Shown: piece by piece, positions 12,953 through 37,998 of the stretch | Layout: each line of letters opens with the position of its first letter | How positions within the stretch are numbered: position 1 is the first letter of the stretch | Sequence record: MK327931.1 | Direction: 5' to 3' (one strand) | DNA: 64,000 bases | The notes under the pieces: model-generated | What the model was told of the DNA's origin: nothing | The model's input: only the letters and a program-made list of their open reading frames with translations | Databases searched by the model: none | Program-made: the position numbers and the translations under genes

Positions 12953-14473
12953 TCATTTCCTTTGATTTAACCATTGCTTCATTGCATGAACACGATCAGT
13001 ACCAGCATGTGTCTGTGGATTCTGTATTTCGTTTTGTGTCGTAGAGTTAGGAGCACTATCAGTATTTAGTGTTACTGTATTGTCAGGTTGCACAGATGGT
13101 GATTTAGCTGCACCAGAAAGCGAATGACGTAATGTTTGCATAGTGCTGGGTGGTAACGCCATGTTCCCTCCACCAATCTTAGAAACACCGCTGTGACGGA
13201 ATCCATTACCTTCGGTTTCCATTTGTTGTACTGTAGTTGCGTGGTCAAGAACTCTCAATGAATCAATATCATATGACATACGCAAACGGGAACCTACTGC
13301 ACTACTGTTACGTGTTTTTTGGAAATCAAACCATAGTTCGCCAGTTTCTTTTTTTGCTTCAATATAAATTACGTTATCAGCAGTATAAATTTTTGAAATA
13401 CCACCAGCAATCTGACTTTGACTTTTCTTATCTTCGTCCATACCACTACGGTTAAACTGAGATGCAGTGAAAACAGTCAAATCCATTTTGGATGCAAGAG
13501 CACGTAATTCTTCTGATACAAATTTATCTTTAGTAAATGTATTGGATTTATCATTTGGTCCAAGACGATTAGAAGTTAATAGATCCAAATAGTCCACGCA
13601 TACATAATCAAGTTTGATTTCCATCTTAATTTGTAATTCACGTAGATAACTTTCAATATCGTCTGTGGTTGTTACAGATTCAGGTAAGCGTTTAATACGC
13701 AACATACCACTGTTTTTACCTTCAACTTTAACAGCAAATCCAATCTTTTCAGCTTCATTTTTTACGTTACTGAGTTTTGATTCAGTCATCATACCATAGA
13801 TACGAACAGCAACCAACTCTTCAGCTAGTTCAAGTGAAATGTATGCACCATTCATTCCAGCTTTCGCAAAGTTAACTGCTAAATTTTGCAGTACTACTGA
13901 TTTACCACCACCTGATGCAGCAGCAAAGATCTCTAACTCTCTACGCCCAAATCCACCGAAAAGTTTGTAATCAAGAGTTTCCCAACCACTCTTAAATGAT
14001 CCTTGCATTGTACTGAGTGAGCGGATTGTATCTTCAGGGTTTTCAAAAATATCCAAACCTAACTCATTCTGTACCGTTACCAACATTGCTTCTCGGATTA
14101 GTTCTTCGATTCCACCATATTTTTTCTGATGGACAAGTTCCATTCCTTTTTCAACGGCTAAAGCTAATGCTTTATGGCGACAAAATTCACCACAGGTATC
14201 AAGTACTGATTGTTTATGTAATTCTTGAACTTCATATTGATCGTATTGATAACCACCTTTAACTTCAATATCTTTCAAAGTAGGTGATGAACTATATTTT
14301 GCAGCATAATCATGCACGTATTGAATACTTTCATGAAATGTTTTATCAAAATATTCTGGTTTAAGGATATTTTTACAACGTACATATAAATCAGGATTAC
14401 TGAAAATCTGAGATAATAAGTATTGTTGTGCATTAATCCCATATTGTTTCACATCCACTGTGCTTTGAATCAT
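12953..14473 (-). CDS. gp41: Replicative DnaB-like helicase
   Basis: Walker A AAASGGGKS, ISLELAEE, VDYLDLL, FTASQFNRSG, QKTRNSS. Confidence 0.93.
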   Translation of the reverse strand: MIQSTVDVKQYGINAQQYLLSQIFSNPDLYVRCKNILKPEYFDKTFHESIQYVHDYAAKYSSSPTLKDIEVKGGYQYDQYEVQELHKQSVLDTCGEFCRHKALALAVEKGMELVHQKKYGGIEELIREAMLVTVQNELGLDIFENPEDTIRSLSTMQGSFKSGWETLDYKLFGGFGRRELEIFAAASGGGKSVVLQNLAVNFAKAGMNGAYISLELAEELVAVRIYGMMTESKLSNVKNEAEKIGFAVKVEGKNSGMLRIKRLPESVTTTDDIESYLRELQIKMEIKLDYVCVDYLDLLTSNRLGPNDKSNTFTKDKFVSEELRALASKMDLTVFTASQFNRSGMDEDKKSQSQIAGGISKIYTADNVIYIEAKKETGELWFDFQKTRNSSAVGSRLRMSYDIDSLRVLDHATTVQQMETEGNGFRHSGVSKIGGGNMALPPSTMQTLRHSLSGAAKSPSVQPDNTVTLNTDSAPNSTTQNEIQNPQTHAGTDRVHAMKQWLNQRK

Positions 14474-14495
14474 CTATGTTCCCTCATTATATGTA

Positions 14496-15551
14496 TTACA
14501 TCCATTTATCCGTTTGAGCTTTAATATAAAATGGCTCATCTACTATACTATCATGTATTAATTGTAAACAAAATAACCTACCAAATCGTGCACAAGCTTC
14601 TTCAAAGTCTTTGATATGACGTATTGTACTACCTTCTCTTACAGCACCAAAGTCTGGGAAGGAAACACTGAATCCATTTTCAAGTGCTTGGTCTATAGTT
14701 ATTAATCCATCTTTATCTCTATCTGGAACAATAACTATTTTTTTACCTTTTTGCTGTGCATCTTTTAATACATCAATCTGTACGTTTGATAATTTAAAGT
14801 TATTAGCAGATACACCACCCATTAATGCTGCGTCTAACGGACCCTCACATACTAAAATTGTTTTTATTCGTTCATCTTTTAATAAATCATAGTTATATAG
14901 TATATTAGTACTTACTTGATTTATGAACCTGTATGTACTTCCAGGATCTTTTAATTTATGTCGTGCAGTATAACCAATAATTTTACCATTCATGAAATAT
15001 GGAATAATAAATCTGTCATACATTTTATGTTCTTTATTAGGTGACCAATATAATTCTAAGTCTAACAGATATGGGTTTCTTTCATTGACATTATGCAAAA
15101 CACTTATAAATTCTTGTGGAATTTTATCTTCAGGTAAAGAAGCCCATTCCCAAAATGTTTTTGCATTTGATGGCAAATCACGTACTGTTACTCGGTCATA
15201 CAATTTTGATGCAACAGTTTCTTGTGCAGCAAAATCACCGCTGTCAACCATTTCTTTAATATAAAACTTAACTAATTCTATTTCTTTATCTTGTGCACCA
15301 AAAGAAATGAGCAAAGACTCCATATCTTTGCTCATATATTTTCCTGGTTGCCAACCAGTTTTTAAACTACAGTTAAAGCAGTTATATGAAACGGAACCAT
15401 CTGCATTGAACATATGATTACCACGGTGCTTTGTATCCGGCCTTGAATGTCCTCTGAACACACAAGCTGGACAGTTGTGTTGTGACCATGTACCAATCGC
15501 AGGTACTGGATCATTCATAATTTGTGCCATTATGTTTTGTACAGCGTTCAT
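14496..15551 (-). CDS. gp61: DNA primase
   Basis: Zn ribbon CPAC...CFNC; TOPRIM CEGPLDA and PDRDKDG; next to the helicase. Confidence 0.92.
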   Translation of the reverse strand: MNAVQNIMAQIMNDPVPAIGTWSQHNCPACVFRGHSRPDTKHRGNHMFNADGSVSYNCFNCSLKTGWQPGKYMSKDMESLLISFGAQDKEIELVKFYIKEMVDSGDFAAQETVASKLYDRVTVRDLPSNAKTFWEWASLPEDKIPQEFISVLHNVNERNPYLLDLELYWSPNKEHKMYDRFIIPYFMNGKIIGYTARHKLKDPGSTYRFINQVSTNILYNYDLLKDERIKTILVCEGPLDAALMGGVSANNFKLSNVQIDVLKDAQQKGKKIVIVPDRDKDGLITIDQALENGFSVSFPDFGAVREGSTIRHIKDFEEACARFGRLFCLQLIHDSIVDEPFYIKAQTDKWM

Positions 15552-15608: not shown

Positions 15609-16650
15609 ATCTACGTATCAAAATTTTAGGTACTGTTAGGAAAGGGTCATACACTTTTCGGACAGCAGCATAGTCATATGGTACTGGAACAATTTTGGGA
15701 TGAATAGCAACCACCAAACGTAACCACATATAATTTCCTTTAAAATTAAATGCTTGTATTCCGTCAAGTTCTTTTGGAAAACCTTCTGAATCAATTCCAT
15801 TTTCAATATAATCCTTTCCATCTAATTTAATAATAAACCATTTATAGTTTTCATTATCATTAGGTACGTTGTTACACAAGCACCCTTGTAGCTGTATTCT
15901 ACCAATAAATTTATCAAAATAGATTGCAATACTACTTAATCCATCTACTAATCCAAACTGCATTTGTGCTGGTAGTGGAGTTGATGCGAGAATATCATAT
16001 TCACCAATCATACCATTTCCAATTGGTTCATGATATAAACGCTTTATAGTTGTCCATGCTGGATTTTTATTAACTGATATTTCAGTACTGGGGACAAATA
16101 CAGGTGCTGCTTGGTCTGAAATTATTAGCTCTGCTGATGCCTCAAAGTTCATCCCTGTATATAGATATTGTGTTGGTTCTATAAGTGAACCATCCATTGT
16201 TACTTTAGTAATGCTCCATCTATATTTTGAACCAGGACTGGTATCTTGAATAACTCCTGCTGGAACAATACATCCATAATATACTTTCTTTTTATTTCCT
16301 AATGTTTGTCTTGCTTGTCCACTTTCTGATAACCAACTGGGTTCTTGTTTTTCTAATACAACATCAAATAGTTTAGTATTATTTCGTGCATCAAAAATCA
16401 TAAATGTAAGATATTCATTATCTTTCAATAAAGTATATTTTCCATCAGCGTTGTGAACAGTAAAAGATAAATTATTATTTGCCCCTCTATATATAGTTAG
16501 TTTTTCATTGCTATATGGCATATTAAAATTGCCCAATGATACTTCCTGATTATAAGGGTACATAAACACGCCGTGATGAGCCATAGTTTTTCCTTCCATA
16601 AATAATAGGTATAAATTTATACTAATATTTATGGAACTAATATGAATCAA
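15607..16650 (-). CDS. Hypothetical protein, probably virion-associated (probable start 16584)
   Basis: Beta-rich; SD before ATG 16584; ATAAATA late-like element near 16626-16632. Confidence 0.55.
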   Translation of the reverse strand: MIHISSINISINLYLLFMEGKTMAHHGVFMYPYNQEVSLGNFNMPYSNEKLTIYRGANNNLSFTVHNADGKYTLLKDNEYLTFMIFDARNNTKLFDVVLEKQEPSWLSESGQARQTLGNKKKVYYGCIVPAGVIQDTSPGSKYRWSITKVTMDGSLIEPTQYLYTGMNFEASAELIISDQAAPVFVPSTEISVNKNPAWTTIKRLYHEPIGNGMIGEYDILASTPLPAQMQFGLVDGLSSIAIYFDKFIGRIQLQGCLCNNVPNDNENYKWFIIKLDGKDYIENGIDSEGFPKELDGIQAFNFKGNYMWLRLVVAIHPKIVPVPYDYAAVRKVYDPFLTVPKILIRR

Positions 16651-16995
16651 TATAACACTATTCCACCATTCATTACTGTAATCCAGTATGATGGTAAAAC
16701 GTTTGTTGGTATCATCAAAATCAAAAGCAAACAGTATACAACTCTTTACTGTTTCGATGATATGGATGATTCAATGCAAGACGAATTGTTAGGTATAGCA
16801 CACGATTGGTGGTGGCAAAGTAATAGAACCATTCCAGTTTGTCTATTCTTTCAAGAAGAGATGGAGAAATTTGAACCGTACACACAGAGATTCGATACAC
16901 CGTCGGTGAATTTCGTATGTGGTCCAGTAGTTTCTTTAAGCAATTTGCCACAGAAACGCATCAAGCGTCGTAATGTGGCTCTTAAGAAGAAGTAA
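16642..16995 (+). CDS. Hypothetical protein (lone plus-strand gene)
   Basis: 117 aa; divergent from the previous gene; CATAAATA element at 16597-16604. Confidence 0.6.
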   Translation: MNQYNTIPPFITVIQYDGKTFVGIIKIKSKQYTTLYCFDDMDDSMQDELLGIAHDWWWQSNRTIPVCLFFQEEMEKFEPYTQRFDTPSVNFVCGPVVSLSNLPQKRIKRRNVALKKK

Positions 16996-17620
16996 GATGT
17001 TCAACTAAAGCATTTAGTTGTACAACAATCATTAAGCTATATGCGTAAGCATGTGGCTTTTTGAAATATCGTAATTTATTTCCTGCTTGGTCAGTGCCTA
17101 TAGTACTATAATCCCATATGGTAGCTTTAACTTCGTCCCATGTGTTCATACTTTGGCACTGCCTTTTTCCTGGGCGAATCATTGCAATAAACATTGCTAG
17201 TTCGTCTATAGATTTAGGCTTCCATACATTTAATAAAGTTACATGTTTTTTAATTTGCGATAGATGTTCTACAATTTCGGGTTCTAACAATAGATCCCAA
17301 TTTGGTTCCTGATTCATTAGTTCTTTTAAATGCTCTCTATCACGAACATACATGTAAGCTGACTGTGAAAGAATATCAACTTTTTGATACCCTAACCTTT
17401 CAGCTTCTTTATATTGTATACTTGCCAATCCAGTGATTGGATCAATAGGTATATTATCAAAATGAACACCACTATTATGGGGGATTAAACCATCCTCCGT
17501 AATTTTTTCAGTACTTCGCACACATGGAAGTTTAGCGATTACGCTTTTACTATCCTTGAAGTCAATGTCAATATCAGTTCGGGCTTTTCTATAATGTTTA
17601 GAATCGGTCGAATCCTGCAT
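16982..17620 (-). CDS. Minimal DNA polymerase III alpha (DnaE)-like protein
   Basis: TDIDIDF, HNSGVHF, KVDIL, ELAMFIAMIRPG and FKKPHAYAY match DnaE palm/finger motifs in order; only 212 aa. Confidence 0.8.
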   Translation of the reverse strand: MQDSTDSKHYRKARTDIDIDFKDSKSVIAKLPCVRSTEKITEDGLIPHNSGVHFDNIPIDPITGLASIQYKEAERLGYQKVDILSQSAYMYVRDREHLKELMNQEPNWDLLLEPEIVEHLSQIKKHVTLLNVWKPKSIDELAMFIAMIRPGKRQCQSMNTWDEVKATIWDYSTIGTDQAGNKLRYFKKPHAYAYSLMIVVQLNALVEHLTSS

Positions 17621-17927
17621 TTTTTATTTGCTCCTGTAACTGTTTAACTGTATTAGTCAAAGTTGATATTTGATTCTCTAATAATCTACAATTTTGTTTT
17701 GTCTTTGCCAATTCTTGACTTAAACTGAAAAAGCGTTCTTCGTGTCTTTCTACCAAAGAAATAATTTTTTCAATACGAGCAGGATCATGAACTTGAAATG
17801 TTTTACCATCTAAAGTTATTTCAGTAATAGATCCTTGTCTAAGTAGAGATATTTGTTTTGATTTTTGTTCTTTAGGTACAGGTACATACCCTTCTGGTAT
17901 TTTATTATATATACTTTTTCCATTCAT
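17598..17927 (-). CDS. Hypothetical coiled-coil protein
   Basis: Heptad pattern in the C-terminal half. Confidence 0.6.
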   Translation of the reverse strand: MNGKSIYNKIPEGYVPVPKEQKSKQISLLRQGSITEITLDGKTFQVHDPARIEKIISLVERHEERFFSLSQELAKTKQNCRLLENQISTLTNTVKQLQEQIKNAGFDRF

Positions 17928-18634
17928 AATCCTGCCTCACATAGCATAATCTTAATTTCATCACAATCCTTTTTGTATTTTATAGTTTTGATTTCAAAAT
18001 AACTTGGATCGATGTATTTAAGTATATATTCAATTTCTGAGTTTGATAGTTTTTTAAAAAACTTATTAGTACTTTTTTTAGGAGCAAGCCAGATAATCCA
18101 AGGTGAAATTTTACCACTCTCAATCCATGCAATTGCACGGGCAGAACTTACATTTTCAAAGAAAGTATTCCATTGTACATTCAAATTTTCAGCCCATTCA
18201 ACCAGTGAGATAACACTTCTTGCAATTGCTTCTTTTGGGTGCTCGGCACGAATTGTTTTTAATATCCATTCATCTTTTGCTTTATATGTACTCCATTCCG
18301 TGATTGGTTTGTTATTGATAATCAAGTACTTTACAAACTCGTCCACATTAATAATATCTCTATTATTCAAATAGTATTCGGCAAAACTATAAAAATCATT
18401 AAAGTACTTTGACTTTATAAAAGCAATAAAAGGCTCTACGCCTTTTTTAAATGGGAACTTATTCAATTCCATAAATTGCATATATATACGAAAAGCCTCC
18501 ATCATCTGGCGGCTTTGGCGGTCTTCGTATCGGTCACGTTTTATACATTTATGTGTGTTTACAGTTTCTTCACGTTTAAATTCACGATCACAAAATCTAC
18601 AGGTATATACTTTATTACTTGATTTCTTTGCCAT
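17924..18634 (-). CDS. Hypothetical protein with N-terminal C2H2/C2HC-type zinc finger
   Basis: YTCRFCDREFKREETVNTHKC. Confidence 0.65.
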   Translation of the reverse strand: MAKKSSNKVYTCRFCDREFKREETVNTHKCIKRDRYEDRQSRQMMEAFRIYMQFMELNKFPFKKGVEPFIAFIKSKYFNDFYSFAEYYLNNRDIINVDEFVKYLIINNKPITEWSTYKAKDEWILKTIRAEHPKEAIARSVISLVEWAENLNVQWNTFFENVSSARAIAWIESGKISPWIIWLAPKKSTNKFFKKLSNSEIEYILKYIDPSYFEIKTIKYKKDCDEIKIMLCEAGL

Positions 18635-21955: not shown

Positions 21956-22774
21956 TTAATTAGTTCGAGTATTATATTCGTACTCAAATGTATATACTAA
22001 ATCTTTATCACAGTTAGGGTTACTTGCATCTAAAATGTCACTATTAGTAATCATCCATTCAATGTAATTCAATGGAACTGTACTCATTGGCTCACCTTTG
22101 TGTTTACCAAATGGCATGAATTGATAACGCATTGGTGTGTTGCAGAAAGTTACAATTTGCTCACCAATATCACCATTAGGTTCGATATGTCCACGTTCGA
22201 TTGCAATTTCAACTAATTTGATTAGAACCTGATAACACATAAACACATCGTCTTTTGCTGCGTGTGCATTAACAGGTCGATGAACATCACGATAACATCC
22301 AAACTTATACCACAAATAACTTAGAGTTAAGTTTTTAAATTCAATATCTTCTGCGAACATTTTCTTAGCAAGACGAAGGGTACAAATCCATTTATTTTCA
22401 TCAAGTAAGTACTGTGAAATTGAGTTACGATATTTATATTCGTTATCTACCATCATTCTACGGTCAAATTGTACATTATGACCAACAAAATACTTACGGC
22501 ATCCCATAAGTGCATCAATGTTATCTAAATCATCTTTATACCCAACACAATTAGCTACATCCTCAGTACTGATAAAGTGCACAGCAGATGCCTCTGGTGG
22601 AATATCTTTCAAGGGTTTGTATCTCAATGTATAGTTATCAATAGTATCAATGTTTTCATGTGAAGTATGTGGATACGAGATACTAAATTCAATAATATCA
22701 TCTTCACTCTCAACCCCAGTAGTTTCAGTATCTAGAACTGCTACATTTGATAAAAACTCATTTAATTTTGTCAT
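21956..22774 (-). CDS. DEDDh 3'-5' exonuclease (DnaQ/ExoX-like)
   Basis: LDTETTG, VGHNVQFD, AHAAKDD; C-terminal MPFGKHKG module as in ExoX. Confidence 0.9.
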   Translation of the reverse strand: MTKLNEFLSNVAVLDTETTGVESEDDIIEFSISYPHTSHENIDTIDNYTLRYKPLKDIPPEASAVHFISTEDVANCVGYKDDLDNIDALMGCRKYFVGHNVQFDRRMMVDNEYKYRNSISQYLLDENKWICTLRLAKKMFAEDIEFKNLTLSYLWYKFGCYRDVHRPVNAHAAKDDVFMCYQVLIKLVEIAIERGHIEPNGDIGEQIVTFCNTPMRYQFMPFGKHKGEPMSTVPLNYIEWMITNSDILDASNPNCDKDLVYTFEYEYNTRTN

Positions 22775-34992: not shown

Positions 34993-37900
34993 TTACCAAG
35001 TGAAGAATCCATTGTTTACTGACGCAGTACTTTTTTCATGAATACCAATATCCATATCCAAAATACCAAAAATATTCTCTAATTTTTTAGTTAGAACAAT
35101 CTCTTCCATTTTTTCAGTATCAAATGGTAGTTCCAAGAACCATTCTGGTAGATACTCAACACAGTCAATTGGATATCCAACAGCTTTAATTCCCATAGGA
35201 TTATCTTTTAAGTTACAGACAATTACTTTTGTTCCATCTGTTACTTCTGGAACAGATTTATCATCATAAACTTCACGTAGACGGTTCCATTGGATACCAG
35301 CAAGAACGTGACCAACTTTACACTTACCAGTTAGCTGATATTCAGCCTCTAAATTAGTGTAGTTTTTTACAGTTTTTGGTGAACCTTTTTCATGTACAGG
35401 CATATCCTTAAATACGTCCTTAAACTCACGTACACGCTGTTTTAGCTGCTGTTCACTCTCACCTACCAGTAATGCGATTAGAGTCTCTTCTAGGAAGTTC
35501 TGGATGTATTTTGGCGTGTCTGAGCGTTTAATTTCAAGACCCATCGCTTTGATTTCACCTGGTTTACCATCAATATCTTTACGGAACCCATCTTCCCAGT
35601 ACTTCAGAATTGCATAACGTTTTTTCTTCAAGAATAGGCCACGTGAACCAACCATCTCAAGGTCTGCACCAACAATCTTACCTTTTTCAATACCAGTGTT
35701 GAACATCTCATGCATAAATGATGGGAAAGATTCACCAACTTCTTCACCAATTTTAATATACATATCAACAATCTCTTCTTTAGATAGATTATATGGAATA
35801 CCTTGTTCTTTCAGATAATGCGTTACACTAAAGTAAACTGAGTCAGTATCACCATAAATTACTGAACCACCTTGGTGATTATATACACCAGTAGTAATCT
35901 CATTGATACGACTTGCCATATGTTTGGTCATAGAACGTCCAGTTAATGTTACGGATTGACCTAAACGTTTGTCAAAGAAACGAGAACCTTTGTTCAATAG
36001 TGCACCATATAGACTGTTTAGAAGAATCTTACGAATCTGTTGGTTCTGTTTCCAGAAAGCACTACGTTGTTTGAAGTAATCTTTTTCTTCTTTAGGACAG
36101 AAAATACGACCATCTTTTAGTACTAAACCATTTTCTACAATCAACTTAGCAACTTCATCCCATTGTCCTTTACCAATTTCTTTACGAAGTAAGTATACAG
36201 GATCATTATCATGAATATTAGTTCTAAACATTGTACCAGGGGTATAGTTTGATAGTAGTGGTTCGACTTTTTCATAGCCATTAAACTCCCAACCATCAGT
36301 ATACATATGTTTATAGTCAATGACCATTTTTTGCTGTGCTTTACGTTCAGAATACCATTGAGTTAGAATGTCAGGAATTACACCAGACTTAGACTTATCA
36401 AAAAGTGTTCCGTTTGCACTAAGTACAATAGTACTATCTTCTGCAAAAATAATATCATATAGCTCTTTGCCCGTTGCTTTAAAAGAACTCCCATCTTCTA
36501 AATCAACAATCAATGTTTCTTCTGACTTTTCATGAACCATTGTAAATTCAACAGCAGCAAATAAACCATGCCATGCCGCAGTCCAATCTGGTTCAAATGA
36601 TTTAGATTTAGATTTGTTCTTCTGTTCTTGGATTTTAGCTGCAAGATACGCATCGGTGTAATCTTGACGTAATTGACCAAGAATACATTCAGTACTCATA
36701 CCCAAAGTACGTAGAACAGTAGGGTAAAGAGAGTTAAAGTCAGTACACCCAAGGTCACTTACAAGTCCTAGTACTGGATCTTGTACCCATGCACCTGCTG
36801 CTTTTGCACTAATTTTCTCATCTTCATCTTCACCATCTTCACCATAATATTCCATTTCTGGATCAAACTCAAGATCATCTTTAGGTGCTTTGTTAAAAAC
36901 AACTTCACCACGAGTATGTGCTAAGTTGATAATAGCAGTGTCGATTAGTGCTACTGAACCCATTGTTGTGCTGATAAGTACACATTCTTTGTGTGCAAGT
37001 CGATTGTGTAGGTTGATATAGTCACATTTAGCATCAATCTTTTTAAGAAGAATACTATCCTGTTTAGAATAACGCAAGAAAGTAATGTAATCCTCTCTGT
37101 AAAGTTTATCCAATGAACCTTCATATGATACTTTATTTTCTTTAGTTACTTTTTCAGCAATATAATCTAGTTTATAAGATTGTTCAACTTGACCAGCATG
37201 TTTCTTATACAAAGCCAAATAATCAAGATGGACGCGACCTACCAGATCATATGTTTGAACAGTTTTACCAAAGTTGTCTGCTTCACGTGAATTTGGTTTT
37301 TTATTCCATAAACACCAACGAGCAGTTGTTGCTTCATTGAAGATTTTTTTAGTTCGATTGATCATATATGGAATATCAAAGAATTCACTATTCCATCCTG
37401 AAATAACATCAGAATCATCAATTAAACTAAAGAATTCCATAAACATTTCCTTTTCGTCTGTATATAAAATTACAGTACTGTTAGGATCGTTTGTTTCTTC
37501 ATTTAGTTGGCGAACAATATCTTGTGCTTCATAAATTTCCATATCAGCAGGTGGTAAAGTAAGTACATAATCCTTTCCAGTCCACGATTGATATAGAGAA
37601 ATAGCGGTTACTCGGTTAAACGGGTCTGATGGTGGAGCATAACCAAATTTCTTATGGAAATCAGTCTCGATATCGAAGAACACGATGTTCAAATCGGGTG
37701 AACCTTTTCCCATATATTCTTTAGCTAATGTTTTAAATGTAATGTTACAATCACTTTCAAAAATACGTAGACCTTCACTTTTGTGTTGCTCTACACTTTT
37801 ATTCATTTGAGCTTGAGTTTGAAACTCAAAATGTTTAGCCATTGTACCATAAACAGTTTTATGTGTTCCTTGTGGGGATTCAACATAATATTCATATACT

Positions 37901-37998
37901 GGATCTAATTCGCGTAGAATACGTTTACCATTCTTACGTTCAACTACATGAAGAATATCACCAGTACGTTTACGTTCCATATAAGCATCGATATACAT
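34993..37998 (-). CDS. gp43: Family B DNA polymerase
   Basis: Exo motifs FFDIETD and GWNSEFFDIPY; pol motifs DFNSLYP, KILLNSLYG, YGDTDS, KKRY. Confidence 0.98.
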   Translation of the reverse strand: MYIDAYMERKRTGDILHVVERKNGKRILRELDPVYEYYVESPQGTHKTVYGTMAKHFEFQTQAQMNKSVEQHKSEGLRIFESDCNITFKTLAKEYMGKGSPDLNIVFFDIETDFHKKFGYAPPSDPFNRVTAISLYQSWTGKDYVLTLPPADMEIYEAQDIVRQLNEETNDPNSTVILYTDEKEMFMEFFSLIDDSDVISGWNSEFFDIPYMINRTKKIFNEATTARWCLWNKKPNSREADNFGKTVQTYDLVGRVHLDYLALYKKHAGQVEQSYKLDYIAEKVTKENKVSYEGSLDKLYREDYITFLRYSKQDSILLKKIDAKCDYINLHNRLAHKECVLISTTMGSVALIDTAIINLAHTRGEVVFNKAPKDDLEFDPEMEYYGEDGEDEDEKISAKAAGAWVQDPVLGLVSDLGCTDFNSLYPTVLRTLGMSTECILGQLRQDYTDAYLAAKIQEQKNKSKSKSFEPDWTAAWHGLFAAVEFTMVHEKSEETLIVDLEDGSSFKATGKELYDIIFAEDSTIVLSANGTLFDKSKSGVIPDILTQWYSERKAQQKMVIDYKHMYTDGWEFNGYEKVEPLLSNYTPGTMFRTNIHDNDPVYLLRKEIGKGQWDEVAKLIVENGLVLKDGRIFCPKEEKDYFKQRSAFWKQNQQIRKILLNSLYGALLNKGSRFFDKRLGQSVTLTGRSMTKHMASRINEITTGVYNHQGGSVIYGDTDSVYFSVTHYLKEQGIPYNLSKEEIVDMYIKIGEEVGESFPSFMHEMFNTGIEKGKIVGADLEMVGSRGLFLKKKRYAILKYWEDGFRKDIDGKPGEIKAMGLEIKRSDTPKYIQNFLEETLIALLVGESEQQLKQRVREFKDVFKDMPVHEKGSPKTVKNYTNLEAEYQLTGKCKVGHVLAGIQWNRLREVYDDKSVPEVTDGTKVIVCNLKDNPMGIKAVGYPIDCVEYLPEWFLELPFDTEKMEEIVLTKKLENIFGILDMDIGIHEKSTASVNNGFFTW

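What the first reader, a model, noticed from the sequence alone, without database searches (positions are those of the whole stretch)
16982..17620. 212-aa mini-DnaE in a phage that already encodes a family B replicase
Seen: DnaE motifs in order (DIDIDF with two catalytic Asp, H.SGV, KVDIL with the third Asp, A.IRPG, FKK.HA.AY). The PHP, most of the thumb, clamp-binding and OB domains are absent. It lies one gene from the primase/helicase block. Inference: a stand-alone C-family nucleotidyltransferase (primer extender, lesion or gap filler, or non-templated signalling-nucleotide synthase) rather than a decayed gene, since the catalytic residues are intact.
Basis: partly seen in the sequence, partly recalled or inferred. 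Interest (0 to 1): 0.65.

Follow-up and report, generated by a model that had tools for sequence, protein, structure and literature searches.

The report
C-terminal half of split mini-DnaE
This 212-residue gene of a 121Q/PBECO4-type jumbo coliphage is the metal-binding half of a two-gene miniature bacterial-type (Pol III alpha) DNA polymerase whose nucleotide-binding half lies about 30 kb away, an arrangement already described by comparative genomics in 2021 but, as far as I found, never tested at the bench.

Summary

"Stand-alone" is wrong. The ORF lacks the GRGS nucleotide-binding part of the palm. That part sits in a separate ~172-aa gene about 30 kb away, outside the window. It ends at the equivalent of E. 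coli DnaE residue 394, where this ORF begins.

- **Co-occurrence:** eight of eight diverse phages carry exactly one copy of each half, 4 to 182 kb apart.
- **Fused forms:** rare single-chain proteins of 336-376 aa exist in metagenomes. One modelled fusion matches Pol III alpha at Z 22.
- **Conservation:** the three catalytic Asp are essentially invariant across 104 representatives. dN/dS is 0.02-0.14.

Iyer et al. 2021 (PMC7824862) already described this split minimal Pol III alpha of group 2.2 jumbo phages. I found no experimental work.

The protein is most likely one subunit of a heterodimeric accessory DNA polymerase. Assembly and activity are inferred, not shown.

New here: the fused forms, one of them next to a primase-type replicase gene, and the conserved synteny of each half.

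The parts
16982..17620 (-). C-terminal (Mg2+-binding palm plus reduced fingers) subunit of the split minimal Pol III alpha; 212 aa, protein P0001
   Evidence: ORF and translation. PHROG 11778 at E 2e-108. Model pLDDT 92.3. VIA-align Z up to 9.7 to Pol III alpha or PolC, covering E. coli DnaE 394-784. dN/dS 0.02-0.14.
17558..17575 (-). DIDIDF motif (residues 16-21). D18 and D20 correspond to E. coli DnaE D401 and D403.
   Evidence: The fused-family profile aligns the DxDxD motif to E. coli PDFDVDF within one stretch, 319-418, at E 1e-11. D16 and D18 are present in 102/102 representatives and D20 in 99/103.
17465..17479 (-). HNSGV motif (residues 48-52) on the palm beta-hairpin
   Evidence: H48 is kept in 101/104 and G51 in 100/104 representatives. 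Strands E34-41 and E44-53 in the model.
17369..17383 (-). KVDIL motif (residues 80-84). D82 corresponds to E. coli DnaE D555, the third catalytic carboxylate.
   Evidence: hhalign pairs KVDIL with E. coli KFDFL at 553-557. K80 and D82 are kept in 104/104 representatives.
17165..17179 (-). IRPGK finger motif (residues 148-152), equivalent to E. coli FRPGP at 638-642
   Evidence: Aligned. R149 is kept in 101/104 and P150 in 102/104 representatives. Weak Pfam DNA_pol3_finger hit over residues 129-162.
17039..17065 (-). FKKPHAYAY finger motif (residues 186-194), equivalent to E. coli FNKSHSAAY at 756-764
   Evidence: Collinear weak stretches. H190 is kept in 99/104 and Y194 in 90/104 representatives.
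34993..37998 (-). Context: family B DNA polymerase (1001 aa), the phage's main replicase candidate
   Evidence: PF03104 at E 4e-23 and PF00136 at E 1e-21. Homologues are present in all 8 phages that carry the split mini-Pol III.
12953..15551 (-). Context: DnaB-type helicase (12953..14473) and primase (14496..15551), syntenic with the C half in distant phages
   Evidence: Pfam DnaB_C. PHROG 47 DNA primase. PA5oct shows the same order: C half, opposite-strand ORF, structural protein, primase.

Best explanation
The ORF encodes the C-terminal subunit of a two-subunit, non-covalently assembled, minimal C-family (Pol III alpha / DnaE-type) DNA polymerase.

- **This subunit** supplies the three metal-binding carboxylates (D18, D20, D82, equivalent to E. 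coli D401, D403, D555). It also supplies a cut-down finger domain carrying the RPG and KxH...Y motifs.
- **The partner** is a ~172-aa protein encoded about 30 kb away on the same strand, outside the window (PBECO4 gp449, next to the clamp loader and topoisomerase II genes). It supplies the helix and GRGS loop that bind the incoming nucleotide's phosphates.
- **Together** the two should rebuild one Pol-beta-type active site.

The enzyme has no PHP domain, thumb, clamp-binding domain or OB domain. It is therefore expected to be a short-patch or partner-dependent polymerase working beside the family B replicase. Possible jobs are primer extension, gap filling, one strand of the fork, or repair.

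Shown: homology, the exact split point, co-occurrence, natural fusions and purifying selection. Inferred: heterodimer formation, templated DNA synthesis and the biological role.
For: **Second piece in the nearest complete record (121Q).** PF07733 positions 16-95 match at E 3e-10 in a 180-aa frame. It aligns to E. coli DnaE 319-394 at E 3.4e-6 and ends there. The model of this ORF aligns from E. coli residue 394 onward.

**Natural fusions.**
- P0300 (375 aa), P0391 and P0392 (376 aa) and P0380 (336 aa) are single-chain forms.
- P0300 and P0380 each carry PHROG 11127 (N half) followed by PHROG 11778 (C half) in one chain.
- The PF07733 match of P0300 (E 5e-16) spans the junction.
- The P0300 model has pLDDT 83.5.
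- It matches Taq Pol III alpha at Z 22.2 (rmsd 3.1, 291 residues aligned), M. tuberculosis DnaE1 at Z 22.1 and PolC at Z 20.9. The next unrelated chain scores Z 3.6.
- Foldseek gives 17 hits at E <= 1e-3, all C-family, best 9.7e-9.
- The fused-family profile hits only Pol III alpha in the PDB at E <= 0.001 (best E 1e-11). One stretch covers both GRGS and PDFDVDF.

**Co-occurrence.** 8 of 8 phages have exactly one C half and one N half, on the same strand, 4.2-182 kb apart. They are PBECO4, RAS14, Slickus01, Vibrio 2.275.O, PA5oct, RsoM2USA, Atu_ph07 and SCTP-2. All 8 also have a family B polymerase homologue. Genus tallies in the phage database are almost identical for the two halves.

**Selection.** The catalytic residues are invariant or nearly so in 104 representatives at 25-47% identity. 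dN/dS is 0.02-0.14; the least saturated pair has dN 0.034 and dS 0.897.

**Context.** The gene lies in a minus-strand replication and recombination block: SSB, UvsX, UvsY, DnaQ-like exonuclease, helicase, then this gene, then primase and DnaB.

**Prior description.** Iyer et al. 2021, PMC7824862.
Against: - No direct evidence that the two proteins bind.
- No biochemical or genetic data were found.
- For this half alone, sequence similarity to DnaE is below significance. Homology rests on the fold and on the fused relatives.
- Loss of the thumb, clamp-binding and OB domains leaves open how DNA is held.
- The two genes are far apart, in different gene clusters, so co-expression is not shown.
- Metatranscriptome contigs cover parts of the gene, but DNA carry-over cannot be excluded.
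Confidence: 0.75

Rival explanations
1. One reading: the 212-aa protein is a self-sufficient, stand-alone C-family nucleotidyltransferase.
For: The Asp triad is intact and conserved. The protein folds confidently on its own.
Against: It begins about 15 residues before the DxD strand. It therefore lacks the helix and GRGS loop that every Pol-beta-type palm uses for the nucleotide's phosphates. That piece is a separate gene, always present with it and fused to it in relatives.
Confidence: 0.05
2. The two halves do assemble, but the enzyme is not a templated DNA polymerase. It could be a template-independent terminal transferase, a nucleotide-signal synthase or an RNA-directed activity. Splitting could serve as an assembly switch.
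For: The Pol-beta-type palm is shared with many non-templated nucleotidyltransferases, which appear as weak hits at about Z 3. The thumb, clamp-binding and OB DNA-holding parts are gone. The two genes sit in different clusters.
Against: The conserved finger motifs (RPG, KxH...Y) and the overall fold are specifically those of Pol III alpha (Z 22 against about 3). Both genes lie among replication genes: primase and helicase for one, clamp loader and topoisomerase for the other. One fused form directly follows a primase-type replicase gene.
Confidence: 0.15
3. The two ORFs are decaying remnants of a once-complete dnaE captured from a host, with no present function.
For: Most Pol III alpha domains are missing, and no PHP domain is found in the genome.
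Against: Both pieces are kept intact in phages as far apart as Escherichia, Pseudomonas, Agrobacterium and Salicola hosts. Catalytic residues are invariant and dN/dS is at most 0.14. The profile search found 511 proteins at E <= 1e-3; nearly all of the 150 best listed are shorter than about 235 aa, most of them 180-220 aa.
Confidence: 0.02

Closest known systems
Split minimal DNA polymerase III alpha of group 2.2 jumbo phages (Iyer, Anantharaman, Krishnan, Burroughs, Aravind 2021, Viruses 13:63, PMC7824862)
   Same: The same thing. The paper describes a phage-specific minimal Pol III alpha, split into an N-terminal NTP-binding protein and a C-terminal Mg2+- and template-binding protein, encoded by distant genes and accompanied by a family B polymerase, with no other Pol III domains. 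Atu_ph07, which the paper names as group 2.2, carries both halves homologous to those of this phage.
   Different: Nothing essential. The quoted passages do not mention three things added here: natural single-chain fusions, one fusion next to an AEP-type replicase gene, and the conserved synteny of each half.
Bacterial Pol III alpha (DnaE) and PolC, family C replicases
   Same: The Pol-beta-type palm has the same three carboxylates, GRGS loop and finger motifs. The fold match is Z 22 for the fused form and Z 9.7 for this half.
   Different: Bacterial enzymes are single chains of about 1100-1450 aa with PHP, thumb, full fingers, clamp-binding and OB domains. Here about 380 aa in two chains keep only the palm and reduced fingers. 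Bacterial Pol III alpha binds its epsilon proofreader through the PHP domain (my own knowledge), and that domain is absent here.
Cyanobacterial split DnaE joined by a split intein (own knowledge, not tested against those sequences here)
   Same: dnaE is encoded as two distant genes.
   Different: There the halves carry intein pieces and are ligated by protein trans-splicing at a site in the fingers. Here the N half ends at the equivalent of E. coli residue 394. The C half starts about 15 residues before the DxD motif. Polymerase-homologous sequence accounts for both lengths, leaving no room for an intein. Assembly must therefore be non-covalent.

Membership tests
Family C DNA polymerase catalytic core (Pol III alpha / DnaE / PolC) | Three catalytic carboxylates on the palm sheet (E. 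coli D401, D403, D555) | tested here: met
   D18 and D20 align to D401 and D403. D82 aligns to D555. All are conserved in 99-104 of 104 representatives.
Family C DNA polymerase catalytic core (Pol III alpha / DnaE / PolC) | Helix plus GRGS loop of the Pol-beta-type palm that binds the incoming nucleotide | tested here: not met
   Absent from this ORF, which starts about 15 residues before the DxD motif. Present instead in the separate N-half gene, where GRGSS is invariant, PF07733 matches at E 2e-9 and the alignment covers E. coli 319-394.
Family C DNA polymerase catalytic core (Pol III alpha / DnaE / PolC) | Palm-plus-fingers fold | tested here: met
   C half: Z 6.0-9.7, 180-206 residues aligned, against 3.9 for the next unrelated chain. 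Fused relative: Z 13.7-22.2 against 3.6 for the next unrelated chain.
Family C DNA polymerase catalytic core (Pol III alpha / DnaE / PolC) | Pfam PF07733 or PF17657 above the gathering score | tested here: not met
   C half: only PF17657 at 13.5 bits against a cut-off of 22. The N half (37.8 bits) and the fused forms (59.6 and 35.4 bits) pass PF07733.
Family C DNA polymerase catalytic core (Pol III alpha / DnaE / PolC) | PHP domain, thumb, clamp-binding and OB domains of cellular enzymes | tested here: not met
   No PHP match in the nearest complete record. 212 residues span E. coli 394-784, with the stretch between the DxD and H-GV motifs cut to 28 residues. Nothing aligns beyond residue 784.
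Family C DNA polymerase catalytic core (Pol III alpha / DnaE / PolC) | Template-directed DNA synthesis | not testable with these tools
Split minimal Pol III alpha of group 2.2 jumbo phages (Iyer et al. 2021) | [quoted passage not shown] | tested here: met
   The halves are 30.4 kb apart in PBECO4 and 4.2-182 kb apart in seven other phages, one copy each. There is no N half in the window.
Split minimal Pol III alpha of group 2.2 jumbo phages (Iyer et al. 2021) | Accompanied by a family B polymerase and no other Pol III domains | tested here: met
   Family B polymerase at 34993..37998, with homologues in all 8 phages. No PHP domain.
Split-intein DnaE | Intein segments at the split ends | tested here: not met
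   The N halves end at EFLK plus 0-10 residues. The C halves begin 0-15 residues before the DxD motif. In fused forms the two are joined by a linker of about 10 residues. No unexplained sequence is left over.

The most novel reading that the evidence does not exclude
The rare single-chain forms of 336-376 aa could be complete, self-sufficient C-family polymerases. One of them overlaps by 4 nt the end of an AEP-type 'Replicase' gene on an 8-kb contig. If so, they would be the smallest polymerases of this family, acting as the extender for a primase-type initiator. The jumbo-phage split pair would then be a heterodimeric version of that minimal replicase and a live model of the ancestral Pol III core, rather than an accessory remnant.
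Probability: 0.2. Interest if true: 0.65.

Novelty: already known. Interest (0 to 1): 0.3.

Why it matters
A polymerase built from about 380 residues in two chains would be the smallest known family C enzyme. It would also be a natural test of which Pol III alpha parts are needed for catalysis.

It raises the question of why phages with a full family B replisome keep a second, bacterial-type active site under strong selection. The idea itself was published in 2021. What remains open is biochemical: whether the halves bind, what the enzyme synthesises, and what it contributes to replication or repair.

The natural fusions found here give a convenient single-chain control for those experiments.

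Tried and rejected
- **Own assembly:** it is not held. I used the nearest record, G001 (348,532 bases, the length of the 121Q record), and public phage records instead.
- **Sequence-only tests of the C half against DnaE:** these were not significant, namely Pfam E 0.045, profile against PDB E 1.4 and hhalign against one E. coli sequence E 0.036 at probability 1.4%. I do not use them as proof. Homology rests on the fold and on the fused relatives.
- **Alignment A3:** MAFFT laid the N halves on top of the C halves, so I discarded it. A4, with four fused sequences, aligned correctly.
- **Complex prediction for the N half plus the C half:** There is therefore no computed support for or against binding.
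- **Expression:** four wastewater metatranscriptome runs hold short contigs, with 0-3 differences, inside the gene. They are contigs from libraries that may contain DNA, so transcription is not shown.
- **Split-intein joining:** rejected, because no spare sequence exists at the split ends.
- **Signalling-nucleotide synthase idea:** no specific support.
- **Upstream 236-aa zinc-finger protein:** the protein atlas returned only phage clusters of unknown function.

Full report
**What the window is.** A 7-kb stretch around the finding is 99-100% identical to Asteriusvirus jumbo coliphages (vB_EcoM_G17, slurp01, Sharanji, PBECO4, 121Q). The finding's ORF runs on the minus strand at 16982..17620 and encodes 212 aa. 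It sits in a long minus-strand block of replication and recombination genes: SSB, UvsX, UvsY, a DnaQ-like exonuclease, a helicase, several unknowns, this gene, then a structural protein, primase and DnaB-type helicase.

**Check of the observation.** All five motifs are present at residues 16-21, 48-52, 80-84, 148-152 and 186-194. The 1001-aa protein at 34993..37998 is a family B polymerase.
- PHROG 11778, labelled DNA polymerase, matches at E 2e-108.
- By sequence alone, similarity of this half to DnaE is weak: Pfam finger domain E 0.045, profile against PDB E 1.4 though collinear, and hhalign E 0.036.
- The structure settles it. The model has pLDDT 92.3. Its 15 best VIA-align matches are all Pol III alpha or PolC, at Z 6.0-9.7 with 180-206 residues aligned, covering E. 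coli DnaE 394-784. The next unrelated chain scores Z 3.9.
- Foldseek's top 17 hits are the same family, best E 3e-3.

The protein starts about 15 residues before the DxD strand, so it lacks the helix and GRGS loop that bind the incoming nucleotide in every Pol-beta-type palm.
- The nearest complete record (G001, 348,532 bases, the length of the 121Q record) holds a second piece. PF07733 positions 16-95 match at E 3e-10 in a 180-aa frame, probably 172 aa from the second Met.
- That piece aligns to E. coli DnaE 319-394 at E 3.4e-6 and ends there. This is where the C half picks up.
- In PBECO4 the piece is gp449 at 239915..240433, on the same strand as the C half and about 30 kb from it. It lies about 13-14 kb outside the window.
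- The window itself has no N half, and no PHP domain is found.

**Evidence that the two belong together.**
- **Co-occurrence.** Eight phages each hold exactly one C half and one N half, on the same strand, 4.2 to 182 kb apart. Five were chosen through a C-half hit, two through an N-half hit, plus PBECO4. All eight have a family B polymerase homologue. Genus tallies over the whole phage database are nearly identical for the two halves.
- **Natural fusions.** A full profile search found 511 proteins at E <= 1e-3. Of the 150 best that are listed, all but two are shorter than about 235 aa (most 180-220 aa); the two longer ones are 375 and 336 aa.
  - Both carry PHROG 11127 (N half) followed by PHROG 11778 (C half) in one chain.
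  - The PF07733 match of the 375-aa protein runs across the junction.
  - Two more fused relatives turned up.
- **Alignment.** In alignment A4 the N halves end, and the C halves begin, on either side of a linker of about 10 residues in the fused proteins.
- **Profile of A4 against PDB.** At E <= 0.001 it hits only Pol III alpha (best E 1e-11). One stretch covers both GRGS and PDFDVDF of E. coli. This fixes D18 and D20 as D401 and D403.
- **Fused model.** It has pLDDT 83.5, high from residue 80 onward. It matches Taq Pol III alpha at Z 22.2 (rmsd 3.1, 291 aligned), M. tuberculosis DnaE1 at 22.1, PolC at 20.9 and E. coli at 13.7-16.2. Unrelated Pol-beta-type nucleotidyltransferases score about 3. 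Foldseek gives 17 hits at E <= 1e-3, all C-family.

**Selection.** Across 104 near-full-length representatives at 25-47% identity to the window protein:

| Residue | Conserved |
|---|---|
| D16 | 102/102 |
| D18 | 102/102 |
| D20 | 99/103 |
| K80 | 104/104 |
| D82 | 104/104 |
| R149 | 101/104 |
| H190 | 99/104 |

Pairwise dN/dS among seven orthologues is 0.02-0.14. The least saturated pair has dN 0.034 and dS 0.897.

**Context.** Each half keeps its own conserved neighbourhood.
- The C half keeps a 236-aa zinc-finger protein upstream, a convergent 117-aa ORF downstream, then a structural protein and the primase. This order holds in PA5oct and the Vibrio phage.
- The N half lies a few genes from the clamp loader in PBECO4, Atu_ph07 and SCTP-2, and near topoisomerase II in PBECO4.
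- One fused form overlaps by 4 nt the end of a 552-aa gene with a PF03090 'Replicase' domain on an 8-kb contig.

**Mechanism.** The most likely reading has three parts.
- The two proteins form a heterodimer that rebuilds one Pol III-type active site.
- This ORF gives the metal ligands and the template-side fingers, and the partner gives the nucleotide-binding loop.
- Without a thumb, clamp-binding or OB domain it should be poorly processive unless other proteins hold it on DNA. This fits an accessory role beside the family B replicase, such as primer extension, gap filling or repair.

Binding and activity are inferred. RNA evidence is inconclusive.

**Comparison with what is known.** Iyer et al. 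2021 (PMC7824862) describe exactly this for group 2.2 jumbo phages. [quoted passage not shown] These come from distant genes, sit beside a family B polymerase, and were proposed to reconstitute an enzyme acting on one strand or in repair. I found no later experimental paper.

The finding is therefore a correct rediscovery with one wrong inference ("stand-alone"). It differs from cyanobacterial split DnaE in having no intein sequence at the split (the comparison itself is from my own knowledge).

**Verdict.** The feature is real and functional, and it is already known from comparative genomics. Interest is modest, resting on the missing biochemistry and on the newly noted natural fusions.

Noticed in passing
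window 16642..16995 (+): A 117-aa ORF converges on the C-half gene and overlaps its 3' end by 14 nt. It is a real conserved gene of unknown function (PHROG 11637, E 1e-57). It holds the same position in PA5oct, Vibrio phage 2.275.O and RAS14.
   Followed up: partly
window 17924..18634 (-): A 236-aa protein with an N-terminal C2H2-like zinc finger (PHROG 11058, function unknown) lies close upstream of the C half in this phage, separated only by the 109-aa ORF at 17598..17927. Its homologues lie likewise just upstream in PA5oct, the Vibrio phage and RsoM2USA. The atlas finds only phage clusters. It is a candidate partner of the mini-polymerase.
   Followed up: partly
window 21956..22774 (-): A stand-alone DnaQ/RNase T-type 3'-5' exonuclease (PF00929, E 7e-15) is annotated elsewhere as 'DNA polymerase exonuclease subunit'. 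The family B polymerase has its own exonuclease domain, so this might proofread for the mini-Pol III, although the PHP docking site is absent.
   Followed up: no
window 17598..17927 (-): A 109-aa coiled-coil protein labelled virion structural protein (PHROG 14909) overlaps the C half's start codon by 23 nt. This suggests translational coupling inside a replication block.
   Followed up: no
L006:1516-4181: On an 8-kb metagenome contig, a fused 336-aa mini-Pol III (P0380) starts 4 nt before the stop of a 552-aa protein with an AEP-type PF03090 'Replicase' domain. A peptidoglycan-binding, endolysin-like gene is nearby. This may be a small phage or plasmid that replicates with a primase-initiator plus mini-Pol III.
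   Followed up: partly
records behind L009, L004, L003, L010, L012, L011 (family B polymerase loci): Matches to the family B polymerase come in two or three pieces in five phages. In PA5oct and Slickus01 the pieces lie in two separate open frames. In RAS14, RsoM2USA and SCTP-2 they lie within one long frame. The Atu_ph07 match has two in-frame stops inside it. This hints at inserted elements or split genes in the main replicase too.
   Followed up: no
protein P0386 (metagenome): A 233-aa protein joins the first ~110 residues of a C half to a pseudouridine-synthase fragment (PF00849). It is probably an assembly or frameshift artefact rather than a real fusion.
   Followed up: no
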